From the NCBI RefSeq assembly GCF_000315625.1, contig NW_005434594.1, forward strand, positions 180,482-244,481: DNA of 64,000 nucleotides, read 5' to 3'. The position numbers and the translations under genes were made by a program. Positions 53,526 through 58,734 of the stretch are shown here, piece by piece. This stretch comes from Guillardia theta CCMP2712 (taxonomy: Eukaryota; Protista; Cryptophyta). Position 1 is the stretch's first letter; each line of letters begins with the position of its first letter. Under the pieces are notes generated by a model. It saw only the letters and a program-made list of their open reading frames with translations, made no database searches and had not been told where the DNA came from.

Positions 53526-53571
53526 GTAAAGTCGCCGCGCTCCTCCTCCTCGTTCTTAGCCATCCTCCTCC

Positions 53572-53671
53572 NNNNNNNNNNNNNNNNNNNNNNNNNNNNN
53601 NNNNNNNNNNNNNNNNNNNNNNNNNNNNNNNNNNNNNNNNNNNNNNNNNNNNNNNNNNNNNNNNNNNNNNN
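53572..53671. other. Assembly gap (100 N)
   Basis: Run of N. Confidence 1.
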
Positions 53672-53753
53672 GCCTCCCCCCCACCTTTTTCATTCTGACC
53701 CCGCCCCCCCCGTCGCACTTCCCTCCGCATGTCTCCTGCTCCTCCTCCTTTAC

Positions 53754-55178
53754 TCACTTGTAGACAAACTGGACACCTACAACTCCAGGCTTCTGCTGGT
53801 CCAGGCTCGAGTACCCCTGGGAGGAGGAGGCAGAGCAGTAACAGGAGGAGGAGGAGGAGGAGGAGGAGGAGGAGGAGTAATGACGAGGAGTGACGGAGAG
53901 GAGGAGGAAGAAAGAACGAGGAGAAGGAAACGAAAAGTCAAGTAGTGGAGAGGAGAGGAGAGGAGAGGAGAGGAGAGAAGAGGAGAGGAGAGGAGAGGAG
54001 AGGAGAGGAGAGGAGAGGAGAGGAGAGGAGAGGGAGAATAGTCAGCTATCATCTCAGCATGCTTGCATCTCCGACTCACCTCCTGTGCTTGCTCCAGCGG
54101 CAAGAACAGAGAAGAGAGGAAAAGACTGGGCCTGCAGTGGATAGTCAGCAGCTGTTGAGGAGGAGCAGGAGCAGGAGCAGTTGTTGTTGTTGTTGTTGTT
54201 GTTGTTGTTGATCGTGATGACGATGATGATCATAATCATGATCATGATCATGATGATAATCATGATGATGTGTAGCCGGCACCTGATCCTTCCTACCCAC
54301 GTCCATGCCTCGTCAAACCTCCGTTGCTTGCTCCACAGCCCAGAGAGGTCAGCAGCGATCTGACTGACTTGAGAGCACTTGATAGACAGCTGAGAGTGAG
54401 GAGGAGGAGGGGAGCAGGGAAGAACGTCAGGTGGAGGAGGAGCAGGAGAGTTCCTCTACCTGACTTCGGTGGAAGTTGATGCCCAACAGGAGCTGAGCTG
54501 GTTTCGAGCCGTACCAGGACCCCAGCAGCACCCGTCCTCCTCGAGCTGTATGATCTAGAGCCGCCTGGAGCCCCCGCGGATTGCCCGTCACCTCAATGGA
54601 GAGGTCGATGTGCAGGCGGCGCTGCTGAAGCTCAGCTGGGGTGAGAACGTGCTTCACGCCCATTCTGCGAGCAAGGGCAGCCCGGGCCGGGTCGAGCTCG
54701 ACAGCGACAACATGCTCGGGCCCGACGGTTTGGACGAGGATGGAGCTGACGAGCAAGCCGATCATCCCCTGCCCGAAGACCGCGACTCGCTCGCCGACCA
54801 TCGGGCGAGCATCCTGCACCAGGGAGAGAGCAGTCTCCACAGCTGGGAAGTAGCAGGCGTCTTCGTCAGAGATGTGCTCGGGGACGAGCATAGCGCCGTT
54901 GGCGCTGACGATGGCGTGAGATGAATGGGGAGAGAAGGAAAAGAGTCTTTTCCCCTCCCACTCCCTCGCTGATACTCCACTCCCTATCACCCTCCCCACC
55001 AGGGAGTAGCCGTAGGAAAGAGGATACGCCATTCGCTGCTCCTTCATGTCCTCTATGGTGGTATCCAGCTGGGCGTCCTCCTCGAACTCTCCTCGGAAAA
55101 TCTTCAGCTCAGTCCCGCTGCTGACCTGCAGGACGACGATGTGAGCCGAGGAGGGGGAACAGTACGAGGACGGGAACA

Positions 55179-55214
<36 letters not shown>

Positions 55215-55743
55215 GGGAGAAAGAAGATGGACAAGGTGAGAGAGGGGGGAGAGGAGAGGAAATGAGGAGGAGGAGGTAGAAGGGGATCTTAAGGGCGAGG
55301 AATGAAAATGAGGAGGAGGTAGAAGGGGATCTTGAGGGCGAGGAGGAAGGAAGATTACAGCAGAGCTGAGAGTCTGAAGAAGGAGCTCGTCCTTGGCGAG
55401 TCTGCTGTTGAGCTCGGCGACATCCTGCTCATACCGGACCTTGACTTGCCGAGGACCAACGAACTCAAGGATTGCTCGCTCGTTGCTCACTCCTTCCTTT
55501 CTGCCTGTTTCCTCCTCCTCCTTCTTCTCTCCCTCCTTCTCCTTCTCTCCTCCCTCCTCTACCTCCTCCTCTCCTTGCAGCTGGAACAACAAGTCCTTGT
55601 TCTTGGCTACAATAGTTGCCCTGCTGGACTTGAGCCGGTCGATCCAGCCAGCAACGTTGCAGGAGCGCGAGTTCAAAGGTGCCAGGCCCCTCCCGAAGAA
55701 GTAAAGCATGCACTTCCTCATCGTAGACAGGGCGCTGGACGAT

Positions 55744-55802
<59 letters not shown>

Positions 55803-58154
55803 TGCTGGAGCACTTATCACCCAGTCCGAGCTTCCCTCCGCGAGCATGCATCCCCCATGATCCTGTCAAGTATCATGAGCGTCCAGGAAGGCAGAAAGTC
55901 TCCCAGCACCTGGATGACGTCCTGCAACATCGAGAGGTCGAGGAAGTGCTTCTGCTGCACGCGCAGGTTGTCATGGTAGGAGGCCATCATCGCCACGTCG
56001 CCTGCGGCAGGGTGAGAGAAGGGAGGGCGTGGGGCGAGTGGACGGACTAGGAAGGTCTCCCTGCTGGTGGTGAGAGGGAAGGATGGTTGTCTCCCCGCAG
56101 AAGGAGATGGGAGCGTAGACCAGAGTCTTGCTGCGGGAGCCGGCGATGCGCAACAAAGTCTTGACGAGGACCTGAGGACGGGGAGAGAGGAGGAGGAGGA
56201 GGAGGAGGAGTGAGAAGCAGAGAAGGAGGAAGAAAGGAACAATCAGTGTGAGTTTAGACAGACGAGTGCAAAACAAAACAAGAGGCAAGTGCAGCAAGGA
56301 AAGCAGAGTTCAACAATTGCTGAAGGAGAAGCTAGGAAGAGAGCGACAAGGATCATGGCAAGGACAGCAGCACAAGCACCAGCACCACCAGCACCACCAC
56401 CAGCACCACCACCAGCAGAAGGAGGAGGAGGAGGAGGAGGAGGAGGAGGAGGAGGAGGAGGAGGAGGAGGAGGAGGAGGAGGAGCAGCAGCAGCAGCAGG
56501 AAGATGACGAAGATTTTTGTAAGACGGAGAAATTCGATACCTCCGGGTCCACAAGATCAACGAAGCAGCAGGCAACAAACAGGTCAACCCTGAAGGCCGC
56601 CGGGTCACGGATCGGCTCGCAGAACAGTCAGGATACCTTCCGAAAACGTTCGGTTTCATCCTTCTCACGTCATCCTGGAGTATCGTGACCCGCAGGTTGC
56701 CTCTGCTGAACTGCCGCAACTTTGCGCCCGGCGCTGAACTTCCTCTCTCCTCGTACCCCTGCGACTGTCATCAGCCCAGCAGCACAACGTCCTTCCCACC
56801 TTGGAAGCCAACAGCCTTCCAGCATGCTCGAACAAGGTCCCGTCAACTTCCAGCCCGATGTACTCCACCGGTCCCTCCCTCTCCTCCAAGAATTTCTCGA
56901 GCTTGAAGAGCATAGAAAGCAGCCCCGCTCCCACGTCTACGATCCTCAACGTCTCCTCCCTCCCCAGCAGCGCCAGCCTCCTGCACCGCAGAGAGTCAGC
57001 ACAAGGGTGCTGGTTGACCACAGGCATTACCTGAGCAATGCGCTGAAGACTTGTTCGTTCATCGATCTCTTGTCGATTACGTTCTTTGCCTTGATGTACT
57101 CAACGGCATCAAAGTTCCACTCGTCTTGGGGTGAAATCATTCCAAGAACTTCCAGCATAGCATCTTCTACAGGCCTTCCTGTATCAACCTGCCTGCTCCG
57201 TCACCCATCCTCACCGCATCATTCGCTTCTTCTCCTTCCTCCTCCTCCTCCCCTCCTTCACTCTTTCCCTCCTCCGCTCTTCCCCTCCTCCTCCAGTCTT
57301 CTCTTACTCGTCTTCATGTGCCCTCCCTCCACTCCTCCTGGACTCAATCACCTTCATCGGTCGTATGCCAGCTCCTTCAGCTGTCTTGAGATTCACGTCG
57401 CTGTCGTCAAGCAGCACACAGTCGGCAGGAAGAGCAGCCGCTTTCTTCAGCTCCTCCCAGAACTTTGGCTCTGACTGCACATCGTCAAGGACGGCACGTC
57501 AAGTTCCAGGAGAACAGAACGAGGGAAGGGGTCGAAGGAGAGGATGACACGGAAACAAAGTAGGAGGAGGAGGGGGCAGATACAGTGAGAAGCCGCAGCA
57601 GCAGCAGCAGCATCAGCAGCAGCATCAGCAGCAGCAGCAGGATGCTTTGCAATACTTTGGTCAGTCCTCCCATTTTCTCTGGAGTCGCTATGAAGTTCCA
57701 ACCGACACGGGAAAGGCCCAACGCATTCAGAACCTGCCGATGATGGTAAGATTTCCAAAGATCCTCCCAACAAGCAAAATGTAACCCTTCATTCTCCTCC
57801 TCTCCTCCCCCTCTCCCCATTCCTCTTCTGCTTTCCTCGCCAACTCCTTTCCACCTCTCCTCCTCCTCCCCTCCCCTCCTCCTCCTCCCCCTCCTCTTCT
57901 CCTCCTCATCCTTCCTTCTTGCTTCAGCATCAGCTTATTGCTTACCTTGTTCACGTGCCACAGCGGCGAGTTGCTAGCAATGATCTTCTTGCAAGAAGCA
58001 GAGGAGAGGAGAGGACGCAACATGCTTGCATGGCGGAAACCAGAATCGTCAGAAGAGGCGGGGTTGATAAGGAGCTTGGAGTAGTCCAGCGAAGAGAAGA
58101 CCTGAGGGAGACAAGGACAAGGACAACGATCAGCACAACGATCAGGAAGAGAAA

Positions 58155-58211
<57 letters not shown>

Positions 58212-58734
58212 ACGGCCAAGGCAGGAAACAGGCACTAGCAACAGACCTCCTGATAGAAGCTCTTCTCTTCTTTAGGGCTCAAGTTCCTCTCCTCCTTGAG
58301 GCCTCTCACGGTCGACCCGAACCTCCTGTGTAGCTCGTCGCTCTCCTCAGGCGACATCTTGTACCTGCAGCAGCAGGTCGGATGCTGAGGAGGGAACTCT
58401 CTCCCCAGTCCACCTGCTGAGGCACCATCGATGGATGTTTCGAACGATCTCGTCCTCGAGCCCTGTGGACTTCGGGTAGAGGCAACCATCCACATCGATG
58501 ATAACTGCCATGTCGTCTTGCTTCGCTCCTCCTCCTCCTCGAAGTCTCCGCGTGATGCTCCGTTGGCACGAGGTTTGCAGGAGAGAACTCGATCCTCCAG
58601 CTTCACCTGTTGAGCTTTGACCTTCACATGGCACTCGAGGCTTATTCACCTTGAGTCACATGGAAGACGAGGAGCATGGCTGCAATCAGTCGGACAGCCG
58701 TCATACCTCTCCTCTTCCTCCTCGACCCCATCAT
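53754..58734 (-). CDS. Signal peptide + HAD phosphatase (SDT1/pyrimidine 5'-nucleotidase-like) + class I SAM methyltransferase + MDR-family dehydrogenase fusion
   Basis: HAD: IIDVDGCLYP, ASNSP, GLTK, LLDDSDVN. MTase: EYIKAKNVIDKRSMN, IVDVGAG, CCFVDL, SSDWVI. MDR: SSGTELKIFRG, YGYSLVG, VAVFGQGMIG, LGSWYG, ending GVQFVYK*. Confidence 0.85.

What the first reader, a model, noticed from the sequence alone, without database searches (positions are those of the whole stretch)
53754..58734. Triple enzyme fusion HAD phosphatase-methyltransferase-MDR dehydrogenase: a compressed pathway of unknown product
Seen: both domain junctions lie inside single exons, so the fusion is not a splicing guess. HAD runs into the MTase in ~57189-57030 (VDTGRPVEDAML...FDAVEYIKAKNVIDKRSMN), and the MTase runs into the MDR in ~55850-55360 (SSDWVI...NKDLLFQL...EFVGPRQV). 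The MDR lacks the usual catalytic Zn ligands (SSGTE, GYS). From recall, not searched: MTases starting Y-x-x-AK-x-x-[VI]D-x-R and MDRs with SxGTE/GSWYG occur side by side in prokaryotic operons with 6-pyruvoyl-tetrahydropterin synthase-like and glycosyltransferase genes. Inference: an operon-derived fusion that dephosphorylates, methylates and oxidises or reduces a pterin- or nucleotide-like metabolite inside a membrane-bound compartment.
Basis: partly seen in the sequence, partly recalled or inferred. Interest (0 to 1): 0.72.

Follow-up and report, generated by a model that had tools for sequence, protein, structure and literature searches.

The report
Algal phosphatase-methyltransferase-dehydrogenase fusion enzyme
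This cryptophyte gene really does join a phosphatase, a methyltransferase and a zinc-free dehydrogenase into one protein; the fusion is shared with diatoms and other red-plastid algae and matches an unstudied prokaryotic operon that starts from GTP, so it marks an orphan pathway whose product is unknown.

Summary
Observation confirmed. On the minus strand, 58734-53754, 17 exons with 16 GT-AG introns give one 956-aa frame: signal-like N-terminus, SDT1-type HAD phosphatase, class I methyltransferase (MT), zinc-free BchC-like MDR dehydrogenase. The MT-MDR junction lies inside exon 13 and the HAD-MT junction inside exon 7. A public transcript confirms the last three introns.

The fusion is not unique. 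Colinear 890-1060-aa proteins occur in many diatoms, all unnamed or generically named.

In 63 haloarchaeal loci the MT sits with PTPS-like (53), GT4 (49) and MDR (43) genes. In bacterial metagenome loci RibD_C-type reductase, GTP cyclohydrolase II, a CDP-alcohol phosphatidyltransferase and an LPG_synthase_TM protein also recur.

New here: Vitrella and a Tara Oceans ORF fuse two PTPS-like domains to MT-MDR. The window's genome has one PTPS-like gene of that same FGPAQ type.

Best reading: a module that dephosphorylates, oxidises and methylates a GTP-derived ribitylaminopyrimidine or pterin-type intermediate in a signal-peptide-dependent compartment. Substrate and product are inferred, not shown. 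No paper on the fusion or operon was found.

RNA reads could not be obtained. The joined model was sent to no search tool.

The parts
58650..58734 (-). Exon 1: start codon, basic stretch and hydrophobic signal-peptide/anchor-like segment (residues 1-29)
   Evidence: ATG at 58734, GT donor at 58649. Kyte-Doolittle 11-residue maximum 2.67 at residue 16, like the N-termini of most full-length homologues. The junction to exon 2 is inferred only; an alternative acceptor gives an exon start at 58600.
58414..58606 (-). Exon 2: Ser/Arg/Gly-rich spacer, then HAD motif I (IIDVDGCLY)
   Evidence: AG/GT borders. NCBIfam TIGR01993 Pyr-5'-nucleotidase E 0.002 on this ORF. Aligns to diatom LLDVDNTLY.
58247..58364 (-). 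Exon 3: HAD cap region (DELHRRFGSTVRGL)
   Evidence: E 2e-5 to 1e-4 against diatom proteins.
57946..58101 (-). Exon 4: HAD cap end and motif II (IIASNSPLWHV)
57656..57733 (-). Exon 5: HAD, conserved Lys of motif III (GGLTK)
   Evidence: against Seminavis P0208, E 6e-4.
57352..57474 (-). Exon 6: HAD motif IV (LLDDSDVN)
   Evidence: NCBIfam HAD-IA models, E 7.5e-5 and 0.0012. Borders.
57031..57188 (-). Exon 7: HAD tail/linker and MT N-terminal helix (YIKAKNVIDKRS); the HAD-MT junction lies within this exon
   Evidence: Aligns to diatom YLETKNVVDRQS and haloarchaeal YLAAKESVDDRA.
56800..56980 (-). Exon 8: MT SAM-binding motif I (RIVDVGAGLLSM) and strand 2 (YIGLEVD)
   Evidence: Pfam Methyltransf_32 E 0.0014, below cut-off..
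56637..56758 (-). Exon 9: MT variable insert
   Evidence: Borders and frame only. Weak homology.
56541..56589 (-). Exon 10: MT motif ACCFVDLVDPE
   Evidence: E 8e-6 to 5e-4.
56048..56171 (-). Exon 11: MT motif LVYAPISFCGETTILP (family signature YFPITFxGxT)
55910..56001 (-). Exon 12: MT helical segment
   Evidence: Borders and frame. Placed by position between exons 11 and 13.
55359..55862 (-). Exon 13: MT C-terminus (SSDWVI, an (EQ)x10 insert, MLYFFG, GWIDRLK, NKDLLFQL; to about 55575), an acidic linker (55574-55473), and the MDR N-terminal strands (ILEFVGPRQV...LLLQTLSSA; from 55472). The MT-MDR junction lies within this exon
   Evidence: One open frame, 55865-55107. tblastn and blastp to diatom proteins. 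Own-genome profile hit.
54460..55125 (-). Exon 14: MDR core (VSSGTELK, YGYSLVG, GQGMIGLL Rossmann motif, GSWYG)
   Evidence: Pfam ADH_zinc_N 5.8e-9. 45-49% identity to diatom MDR domains, E about 1e-60. Matches transcript P0001 from residue 27.
54283..54389 (-). Exon 15: MDR
   Evidence: Exact match to transcript P0001.
54080..54131 (-). Exon 16: MDR
   Evidence: Exact match to transcript P0001.
53754..53816 (-). Exon 17: MDR C-terminus and TGA stop (53756-53754)
   Evidence: Exact match to transcript P0001.

Best explanation
One nuclear gene of 17 exons encodes a 956-aa protein. It has an N-terminal signal-peptide-like segment, an SDT1/pyrimidine-5'-nucleotidase-type HAD phosphatase, a class I SAM methyltransferase of a distinct family, and a zinc-free, BchC-like MDR dehydrogenase that probably uses NAD.

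It is the cryptophyte orthologue of a fusion conserved in diatoms. Other eukaryotes carry related MT-MDR fusions with a different N-terminal partner. The MT-MDR core is the eukaryotic counterpart of neighbouring genes in a conserved prokaryotic cluster: RibD_C-type pyrimidine reductase (and often GTP cyclohydrolase II), MDR, PTPS-like T-fold protein, GT4 glycosyltransferase and MT, often with a CDP-alcohol phosphatidyltransferase and an LPG_synthase_TM protein.

Inferred mechanism. The substrate is a GTP-derived 2-amino-4-oxo-pyrimidine compound with a phosphorylated polyol side chain, either diamino-ribitylaminopyrimidinone phosphate or a neopterin-phosphate-like pterin. The HAD removes the phosphate. 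The MDR oxidises a secondary alcohol of the side chain. The MT methylates. The separately encoded FGPAQ-type PTPS-like protein of the same genome (G000:C37:442989-443336) acts in the same pathway.

Shown: the gene structure, the domain identities, the conservation of the fusion, the operon link and the PTPS fusion. Inferred: substrate, reaction order, product and compartment.
For: Gene and fusion:
- 17 exons, all GT-AG, one 956-aa frame. Splicing of all 16 introns is needed, and three introns are confirmed by a transcript.
- The exons are colinear with diatom proteins of 891-1017 aa from Nitzschia, Seminavis, Attheya, Skeletonema, Thalassiosira and Cyclotella. They are also colinear with intron-poor eukaryotic contigs in which HAD+MT is one ORF ending 16-250 nt before the MDR.

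Domains: ADH_zinc_N above cut-off. BchC/TDH-like with Cys, His and Glu replaced. The orthologous HAD matches TIGR01993 over its full length, E 2e-19. The AF2 model of an orthologous MT has pLDDT 95 and a class I fold.

Operon:
- 63 haloarchaeal loci: PTPS 53, GT4 49, MDR 43, CDP-OH transferase 30.
- The MT is present in 95 of 151 sampled genomes of that class.
- Bacterial loci L083, L090 and P0507.
- 17 metagenome loci with room upstream of the MT: MDR 16, PTPS 15, GT4 15, RibD_C 11, CDP-OH 9, LPG_synthase_TM 9, GCH II 7.
- The fused GCH II-RibD_C protein of L083 has no deaminase domain.

Rosetta stone: Vitrella CEM25797.1 (1418 aa) and a single 1196-aa Tara ORF carry PTPS-like x2 + MT + MDR. 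The window genome's only PTPS-family gene matches both Vitrella PTPS-like domains (E 2e-13 and 4e-13) and shares the FGPAQ motif.

Signal: N-terminal hydrophobic segments in most homologues and in exon 1.
Against:
- Transcript ORF P0001 is labelled 'complete' yet starts at an internal Met of exon 14. This may mean an intron-13-retaining or shorter transcript. The Teleaulax ORF P0002 is an MDR-only 'complete' ORF.
- None of the three domains reaches a curated equivalog cut-off, so no substrate is assigned by homology.
- The MT model has no close solved neighbour, TM at most 0.52.
- The HAD has no partner in the prokaryotic clusters.
- GCH II is absent from the 63 haloarchaeal loci.
- No GT4 or CDP-alcohol transferase partner was found in this genome.
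- The CDP-alcohol transferase and the polyol-dehydrogenase affinities of the MDR fit a polyol or lipid-head-group chemistry equally well.
Confidence: 0.55

Rival explanations
1. Polyol or lipid-head-group pathway. MT-MDR modifies a polyol or sugar phosphate, for example oxidation, methylation and reduction of an inositol- or ribitol-type alcohol. The HAD removes the phosphate left by a CDP-alcohol-type or GT4-type condensation. The PTPS-like protein would have a non-pterin role.
For: - A CDP-alcohol phosphatidyltransferase lies beside the cluster in 30 of 63 haloarchaeal loci. In some loci it forms a CDP-OH-MDR-MT trio without PTPS or GT4.
- It recurs together with LPG_synthase_TM in bacteria.
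- Its best, weak matches are inositol-phosphate and glycerol-phosphate transferases.
- The MDR's nearest named relatives are polyol and secondary-alcohol dehydrogenases: TDH, butanediol, idonate, scyllo-inosose and galactitol-1-P dehydrogenases.
- The GT4 resembles MshA/BshA-type enzymes that act on phosphorylated or hydroxylated small acceptors.
Against: - PTPS-like T-fold genes are the most constant neighbours and are physically fused to MT-MDR in two eukaryotic proteins.
- RibD_C and GCH II, which are pyrimidine-specific enzymes, recur in the bacterial clusters.
- No CDP-alcohol transferase partner was found in this genome.
Confidence: 0.22
2. The triple fusion is a gene-model illusion in this species. 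Two or three adjacent genes (HAD; MT-MDR, or HAD-MT; MDR) would be transcribed or translated separately.
For: - The only transcript evidence (P0001) covers exons 14-17 and is called a complete ORF starting inside the MDR.
- The cryptophyte Teleaulax ORF P0002 holds the MDR alone.
- Gene callers split HAD+MT from MDR, or HAD from MT-MDR, on several eukaryotic contigs.
Against: - The MT end and the MDR start share one exon with no stop and no Met in the linker. A protein started at the P0001 Met would lack the first ~87 MDR residues (the N-terminal strands and the SSGTE motif).
- All 16 introns keep one frame.
- Many diatom gene models, the MMETSP 'complete' ORFs P0173 (992 aa, Attheya) and P0398 (918 aa, taxon not named), and a 1196-aa single ORF all show uninterrupted fusions.
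Confidence: 0.07
3. Ordinary riboflavin or folate housekeeping. The HAD would simply be the missing ARPP or dihydroneopterin-phosphate phosphatase of a known vitamin pathway, and MT-MDR an unrelated passenger.
For: - The HAD is of the type that JGI labels 'FMN phosphatase YigB' and matches TIGR01993.
- RibD_C and GCH II are riboflavin-pathway enzymes.
Against: - Neither riboflavin nor folate synthesis needs a SAM methyltransferase, an MDR or a GT4.
- The MT-MDR pair, not the HAD, is the conserved core across archaea, bacteria and eukaryotes.
- The HAD is absent from the prokaryotic clusters.
Confidence: 0.08

Closest known systems
Diatom HAD-MT-MDR proteins annotated as hypothetical or 'alcohol dehydrogenase' (e.g. 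Nitzschia inconspicua P0165, 1015 aa; Seminavis robusta P0208, 995 aa, 'YcjQ-like'; Attheya MMETSP ORF P0173, 992 aa)
   Same: Same three domains in the same order, with an N-terminal hydrophobic signal and the same motifs. Exon-by-exon matches are colinear, and the MDR is 45-49% identical.
   Different: The cryptophyte gene has 16 introns, low-complexity inserts ((EQ)x10 and an acidic linker), and Cys instead of Thr in HAD motif I. None of these proteins has a tested function.
Prokaryotic cluster RibD_C/GCH II - MDR - PTPS-like - GT4 - MT (with or without CDP-alcohol phosphatidyltransferase and LPG_synthase_TM) in Halobacteria, Chloroflexota and other bacteria; no product known
   Same: The MT aligns end to end with shared signature motifs. 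The MDR is 41% identical and has the same SxGTE, GY and GSWYG motifs.
   Different: The genes are separate, there is no HAD phosphatase, and GT4 and membrane proteins are added. This genome has no matching GT4 or CDP-alcohol transferase.
Vitrella brassicaformis CEM25797.1 (P0394) and Tara Oceans ORF P0298: PTPS-like x2 - spacer - MT - MDR
   Same: Same MT-MDR core. The PTPS-like domains are of the FGPAQ type found as a separate gene in this genome.
   Different: The N-terminal partner is PTPS-like instead of HAD. No HAD similarity is detectable in the spacer.
BchC (bacteriochlorophyllide a dehydrogenase) and threonine/polyol dehydrogenases of the MDR superfamily
   Same: MDR fold, about 310-aa short form, Rossmann GxGxxG. 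BchC is the model that matches the haloarchaeal orthologue over its full length. Chemistry: secondary alcohol to ketone.
   Different: Scores lie far below the BchC and TDH cut-offs (42 against 291 bits). The catalytic zinc ligands are replaced (S, Y, S) and there is no structural-zinc lobe.
SDT1 / pyrimidine 5'-nucleotidase family (TIGR01993) of HAD-IA phosphatases
   Same: Motifs I-IV are present in order. The orthologous HAD matches the whole model (E 2e-19).
   Different: Below the curated cut-off (70 against 143 bits). The substrate is untested. Motif I reads DVDGC.
SCO6650 (PDB 3d7j), a PTPS homologue of unknown function, and the 'PTPS-IV' FGPAQ subgroup of COG0720
   Same: The genome's partner candidate (L019) matches SCO6650 at E 1.5e-24 and carries FGPAQ. 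PMC5445326 gives FGPAQ as the PTPS-IV signature.
   Different: This concerns the presumed partner, not the gene itself. The function of PTPS-IV is only mentioned as unpublished in PMC5041015.

Membership tests
MDR superfamily (Pfam ADH_zinc_N) | Rossmann NAD(P)-binding domain scoring above Pfam's gathering threshold | tested here: met
   36.4 bits against a cut-off of 31.8, E 5.8e-9, on window:54430-55428:-. GQGMIGLL motif present.
Zinc-dependent MDR (TDH / sorbitol dehydrogenase type) | Catalytic zinc ligands Cys (CGxD), His-Glu (GHE) and the four-Cys structural-zinc lobe | tested here: not met
   SSGTE aligns to CGTD, and GYS aligns to GHE. The segment corresponding to the lobe is missing from the alignments.
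BchC (TIGR01202 equivalog) | Score above the curated equivalog cut-off | tested here: not met
   42.1 bits against 291.25. The haloarchaeal orthologue scores 72.5 bits over the full length. It resembles BchC but is not a member.
HAD superfamily, subfamily IA, SDT1-like (TIGR01993) | Motifs I (DxDx[TV]), II (S/T), III (K) and IV (DD) in order | tested here: met
   IIDVDGC (fifth residue Cys), ASNSP, GGLTK and LLDDSD, in exons 2, 4, 5 and 6, aligned to diatom DVDNT, ASNSP, YPTK and LDDS.
HAD superfamily, subfamily IA, SDT1-like (TIGR01993) | Score above the curated cut-off | tested here: not met
   Single exons give E 0.002 and 0.17. The orthologous whole HAD gives 70.1 bits against 142.9.
Class I SAM-dependent methyltransferases | Motif I (acidic-x-G-x-G), an acidic residue at the end of strand 2, and a seven-stranded Rossmann-like fold | tested here: met
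   VDVGAG and YIGLEVD in exon 8. The AF2 model of orthologue P0241:285-600 has pLDDT 95.1, and its Foldseek top hits are all class I MTs. The fold was tested on an orthologue, not on the spliced window protein.
Operon-type MT family (this report's working definition) | Signature motifs Y-L-x-x-K-x-x-V-D, F-x-D-L, Y-F-P-I-T-F-x-G-x-T and D-W, with a match along the whole domain | tested here: met
   YIKAKNVID, CCFVDLVDP, LVYAPISFCGETT and SSDWVI. The profile search of the own genome hits only this locus.
Conserved RibD_C/GCH II-MDR-PTPS-GT4-MT pathway | The partner enzymes (PTPS-like, GT4, CDP-alcohol transferase) are present in the same genome | tested here: inconclusive
   One PTPS-like gene is present, of the type fused to MT-MDR in Vitrella. 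The best GT4 hit looks like SQD2. There is no CDP-alcohol transferase match better than E 0.06.
Conserved RibD_C/GCH II-MDR-PTPS-GT4-MT pathway | Substrate and product identity | not testable with these tools
   No characterised member was found in Pfam, NCBIfam, PDB or the paper library.

The most novel reading that the evidence does not exclude
The HAD-MT-MDR protein and its PTPS-like partner belong to a previously undescribed GTP-derived pathway shared by Chloroflexota, Halobacteria and red-plastid algae.

In this reading, GCH II and a deaminase-less RibD_C reductase make diamino-ribitylaminopyrimidinone phosphate. The zinc-free MDR re-oxidises the side chain at C2'. That would give the same amino-ketone as the Amadori step of GTP cyclohydrolase I, so the T-fold protein could close a pterin ring. 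This would be a second route to pterins. Methylation, glycosylation and, in prokaryotes, a phosphodiester or lipid link would then give a new methylated pterin-type or ribityl-pyrimidine-type glycoside or cofactor.
Probability: 0.2. Interest if true: 0.85.

Novelty: new variant of a known kind. Interest (0 to 1): 0.6.

Why it matters
Three known enzyme folds are joined in a combination that no searched paper describes. Yet the combination is conserved in diatoms and at least one cryptophyte, with MT-MDR variants in a chromerid (Vitrella) and other eukaryotes.

Its MT-MDR core ties it to a widespread gene cluster. The MT is found in about 60% of sampled haloarchaeal genomes and is abundant in bacterial metagenomes. 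That cluster carries GTP-derived-pyrimidine chemistry (RibD_C reductase in about two thirds and GTP cyclohydrolase II in about 40% of the bacterial loci with room), and no product is known for it.

Fusions of this kind point directly at which enzymes work together. The locus therefore gives a concrete, testable entry to an orphan metabolite of major marine primary producers: one protein to express, one partner gene to add, and a short list of substrates to try.

Tried and rejected
The exon borders were then read off the printed sequence and checked by coordinates alone.
- The joined 956-aa model was built only inside local scripts, to check the frame and the hydrophobicity of the first residues. 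It was sent to no search or folding tool. All searches used single exons by reference or stored orthologues.
- Pfam and NCBIfam on single HAD and MT exons gave little.
- PDB profile search with the MT gave only weak hits to the SAM-binding part, with polyketide C-methyltransferases first (E 1.4e-5). I judged this too weak to name a methyl acceptor.
- Foldseek against PDB gave generic class I MTs only.
- An Atlas feature search with a diatom protein gave nothing usable.
- An all-against-all BLAST of haloarchaeal ORFs timed out. The reduced version was confounded by antisense ORFs and showed no further widely shared neighbour.
- Nine paper searches found no description of the fusion or of the operon.
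- The SCO6650 structure paper and Phillips et al. 2012 are not held.
- Considered and dropped: identity with BchC or TDH (cut-offs missed, zinc ligands absent); plastid-stroma targeting in diatoms (no aromatic residue seen after the presumed signal cleavage sites in the sequences printed; this was judged by eye only); the haloarchaeal PGP-Me methyltransferase idea (no evidence beyond the neighbouring CDP-alcohol transferase).

Full report
Organism and locus. The window is G000:C80:180482-244481 of an 87.1-Mb assembly in 669 contigs. That fits with an MMETSP transcript ORF identical to part of this gene, and with the cryptophyte Teleaulax amphioxeia as the next best hit. From my own knowledge, the size and contig number fit Guillardia theta CCMP2712. 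No tool named the organism.

Checking the observation. I read the strand base by base. This gave 17 exons: 58734-58650, 58606-58414, 58364-58247, 58101-57946, 57733-57656, 57474-57352, 57188-57031, 56980-56800, 56758-56637, 56589-56541, 56171-56048, 56001-55910, 55862-55359, 55125-54460, 54389-54283, 54131-54080 and 53816-53754.

A coordinate-only script showed that all 16 introns are GT-AG. It also showed that the joined frame is 2871 nt, or 956 aa, starting with Met, ending in TGA and with no internal stop. Fifteen introns have lengths that are not a multiple of three, and the sixteenth holds an in-frame stop, so the frame exists only if all are spliced. Eight introns are only 41-50 nt long.

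Introns 14, 15 and 16 are confirmed by transcript ORF P0001. Its sequence equals exon 14 from residue 27 and exons 15, 16 and 17 exactly. The other junctions rest on GT-AG, frame and homology. The exon 1-2 junction is the least certain, because a second acceptor six bases on keeps the frame.

Exon 7 carries the tail after HAD motif IV, the linker and the first MT helix. Exon 13 carries the MT C-terminus, a 34-residue acidic linker and the first MDR strands.

It was assembled only in local scripts, for the frame check and the N-terminal hydrophobicity. All homology work was done exon by exon or with stored orthologues.

Domain identities.
- MDR. The MDR exon passes Pfam ADH_zinc_N (36.4 bits against 31.8). 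Its best NCBIfam and PDB relatives are threonine, butanediol, idonate and scyllo-inosose dehydrogenases and BchC, all far below equivalog cut-offs.
- MDR zinc sites. Alignments to threonine dehydrogenases put SSGTE opposite CGTD and GYS opposite GHE, and the structural-zinc lobe is missing.
- MDR cofactor. An acidic residue ends the second Rossmann strand in this protein and in its relatives (AVELD here; sequences). From general knowledge of MDRs this suggests NAD rather than NADP. This is an inference.
- HAD. Exons 2, 4, 5 and 6 hold motifs I-IV (DVDGC, ASNSP, TK, LLDDSD). They give weak hits to TIGR01993 (pyrimidine 5'-nucleotidase) and to HAD-IA models. A whole orthologous HAD matches TIGR01993 over its full length at E 2e-19, still below the cut-off.
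- MT. The MT has the GxG motif and an acidic strand-2 end. An AlphaFold model of an orthologous MT domain is confident (pLDDT 95.1) and is a class I fold. Its solved neighbours are generic, with TM at most 0.52. ESM Atlas clusters of about 300-aa bacterial and archaeal proteins match it along the whole length at TM about 0.8.

The fusion is conserved.
- The top MDR hits on long contigs were eukaryotic: their neighbours are UCH/DUSP, ZUO1 and DEAD-box genes. They carry, 16-250 nt upstream, a 611-694-aa ORF that is HAD plus MT plus the first MDR strands.
- A profile search then listed uninterrupted proteins of about 890-1060 aa from Nitzschia, Seminavis, Skeletonema, Thalassiosira, Cyclotella, Cylindrotheca, Mayamaea and Attheya. 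They are annotated as hypothetical or as 'alcohol dehydrogenase'.
- Each exon of the window gene matches these proteins in colinear order. Against Seminavis P0208, for example, exon 2 matches residues 9-75 and exon 15 matches residues 927-960, with the MDR at 45-49% identity.
- Most full-length members, and exon 1 here, begin with a hydrophobic signal-like segment. This supports entry into the endomembrane or complex-plastid route. It does not say which compartment.
- The MT family is single-copy in this genome.

The prokaryotic neighbourhood.
- In Halogeometricum the MDR is followed by PTPS-like, GT4 and MT genes. The haloarchaeal MT aligns with the algal MT domain from first to last helix, with shared signature motifs.
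- A genome scan returned 63 loci, all Halobacteria. Within 5 kb of the MT, PTPS-like genes occur in 53, GT4 in 49 and MDR in 43. Within the 8-kb flanks, a CDP-alcohol phosphatidyltransferase occurs in 30. In some loci it forms a CDP-OH-MDR-MT trio.
- The MT is found in 95 of 151 sampled genomes of that class.
- The family is also abundant in bacteria, with names from Anaerolineales, Aggregatilineales and [Eubacterium] cellulosolvens.
- Three bacterial contexts show a GCH II plus RibD_C reductase directly upstream of MDR-PTPS-MT/GT4, or beside CDP-OH transferase and LPG_synthase_TM.
- In L083 the GCH II-RibD_C protein has no deaminase domain. Its reductase half matches the archaeal 2,5-diamino-6-ribosylamino-pyrimidinone 5'-phosphate reductase model.
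- Of 80 metagenome loci, 17 have at least 6 kb upstream of the MT. Among these, MDR occurs in 16, PTPS in 15, GT4 in 15, RibD_C in 11, CDP-OH transferase in 9, LPG_synthase_TM in 9 and GCH II in 7.
- No HAD of the algal type is present in any of these loci.

A Rosetta-stone link.
- One 90% cluster holds two Vitrella brassicaformis proteins. The longer, CEM25797.1 (1418 aa), has two PTPS-like domains ahead of MT and MDR. The shorter model starts inside the second PTPS-like domain.
- A Tara Oceans scaffold carries the same architecture as one 1196-aa ORF, so it is not a gene-model artefact.
- The spacer in these proteins shows no HAD similarity. There are therefore two architectures around a constant MT-MDR core.
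- The window's genome has a single PTPS-family gene (G000:C37:442989-443336). It carries the FGPAQ motif, which PMC5445326 gives as the PTPS-IV signature.
- That gene is closest to the uncharacterised SCO6650 structure (E 1.5e-24). It matches both Vitrella domains (E 2e-13 and 4e-13), one of which reads AHSFRGKSFGPAQRMHGAT against AHSFTGKEFGPAQNMHGAT here.
- Its N-terminal extension looks like a signal peptide followed by Phe. From my own knowledge, that is the cryptophyte plastid-import pattern; it was not tested.
- The best GT4 match in the genome looks like SQD2, and no CDP-alcohol transferase partner was found.

How it most likely works.
- Shown: one protein with three intact-looking catalytic domains, a conserved MT-MDR pairing across three domains of life, and genetic linkage of that pair to a PTPS-like T-fold protein, to a pyrimidine reductase and often GTP cyclohydrolase II, and to a glycosyltransferase.
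- Inferred: the substrate is a GTP-derived 2-amino-4-oxo-pyrimidine compound with a phosphorylated polyol chain. The HAD removes the phosphate. The MDR oxidises a secondary alcohol. The MT methylates. The PTPS-like partner binds or rearranges the ring system.
- A speculative but chemically coherent version runs as follows. Reduction by RibD_C is followed by MDR oxidation at C2'. This reproduces the amino-ketone of the GTP cyclohydrolase I Amadori step and allows pterin ring closure.
- The recurring CDP-alcohol transferase and LPG_synthase_TM suggest a phosphodiester or membrane link in prokaryotes. They keep a polyol or lipid-head-group reading alive as the main rival.
- An unrooted MT tree splits the sampled fused (eukaryote-type) sequences from the sampled stand-alone sequences with 100/99 support, so the direction of transfer is open. 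L083 and its identical cluster representative P0330 were the only stand-alone rows with evidence of bacterial origin and a traced position. They sit on a long branch among unnamed ~300-aa proteins.

Weak points. P0001 is labelled a complete ORF although it starts at an internal Met of exon 14. This would fit a transcript that retains intron 13. The Teleaulax ORF is MDR-only. Against separate translation, the linker in exon 13 has no stop and no Met, and a protein started at the P0001 Met would lack the first ~87 MDR residues, that is the N-terminal strands and the SSGTE motif.

Literature. Nine full-text searches found no paper on this fusion or this cluster. PMC5041015 states that the function of PTPS-V is unclear and mentions PTPS-IV only through unpublished work.

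Verdict. The gene is one more member of a conserved but uncharacterised fusion family. The interest lies in the orphan pathway it marks, not in this copy being unique.

Noticed in passing
G000:C37:442989-443336 (L019:1066-1872): The genome's only PTPS-family gene. It is of the FGPAQ/SCO6650 type and sits in a 268-aa ORF with a signal-peptide-plus-Phe N-terminal extension. It is the likely partner of the fusion protein.
   Followed up: partly
P0394 (Vitrella brassicaformis CEM25797.1), P0294, and P0298 (L089:125-3715): An alternative architecture: two tandem PTPS-like domains, a spacer of unknown fold of about 200-400 aa (longer in the Tara ORF), then MT and MDR. Vitrella has two copies that are 96% identical. 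P0394 also shows a partial internal repeat of the MDR Rossmann segment, possibly a model or assembly artefact.
   Followed up: partly
L083:3980-11624; L090:1608-8936; L104, L110, L127, L164, L166: Bacterial clusters of 7-8 genes: CDP-alcohol phosphatidyltransferase, LPG_synthase_TM, GCH II, RibD_C, MDR, PTPS-like, GT4 and MT, sometimes with a GSDH-type dehydrogenase or a sulfatase-family membrane protein. No product is known.
   Followed up: partly
Genomes G012, G017, G019, G100, G119, G128, G150: In several haloarchaeal genomes the MT matches in two adjacent pieces (profile positions 4-88 and 114-299), about 10-15 bases apart. This could be a split, frameshifted or insert-bearing variant.
   Followed up: no
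window 53559-53689: A run of N (an assembly gap) lies about 65 bases beyond the stop codon of the gene, so the 3' UTR may be incomplete.
   Followed up: no
window 55742-55801 and 55473-55574; introns of 41-50 nt at 58607-58649, 58365-58413, 56981-57030, 56759-56799, 56590-56636, 56002-56047, 55863-55909: An (EQ)x10 insert lies inside the MT domain and an acidic Glu/Lys linker lies between MT and MDR. Eight of the 16 introns are only 41-50 nt long. The flanks of the gene are full of simple-repeat ORFs on both strands.
   Followed up: no
L037, L056, L065, L077: Some haloarchaea carry only a CDP-alcohol transferase - MDR - MT trio, with no PTPS-like or GT4 gene found in the flanks (three of the four loci are short contigs of 2.3-4.9 kb). 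This hints that MT-MDR can work with the transferase alone.
   Followed up: no
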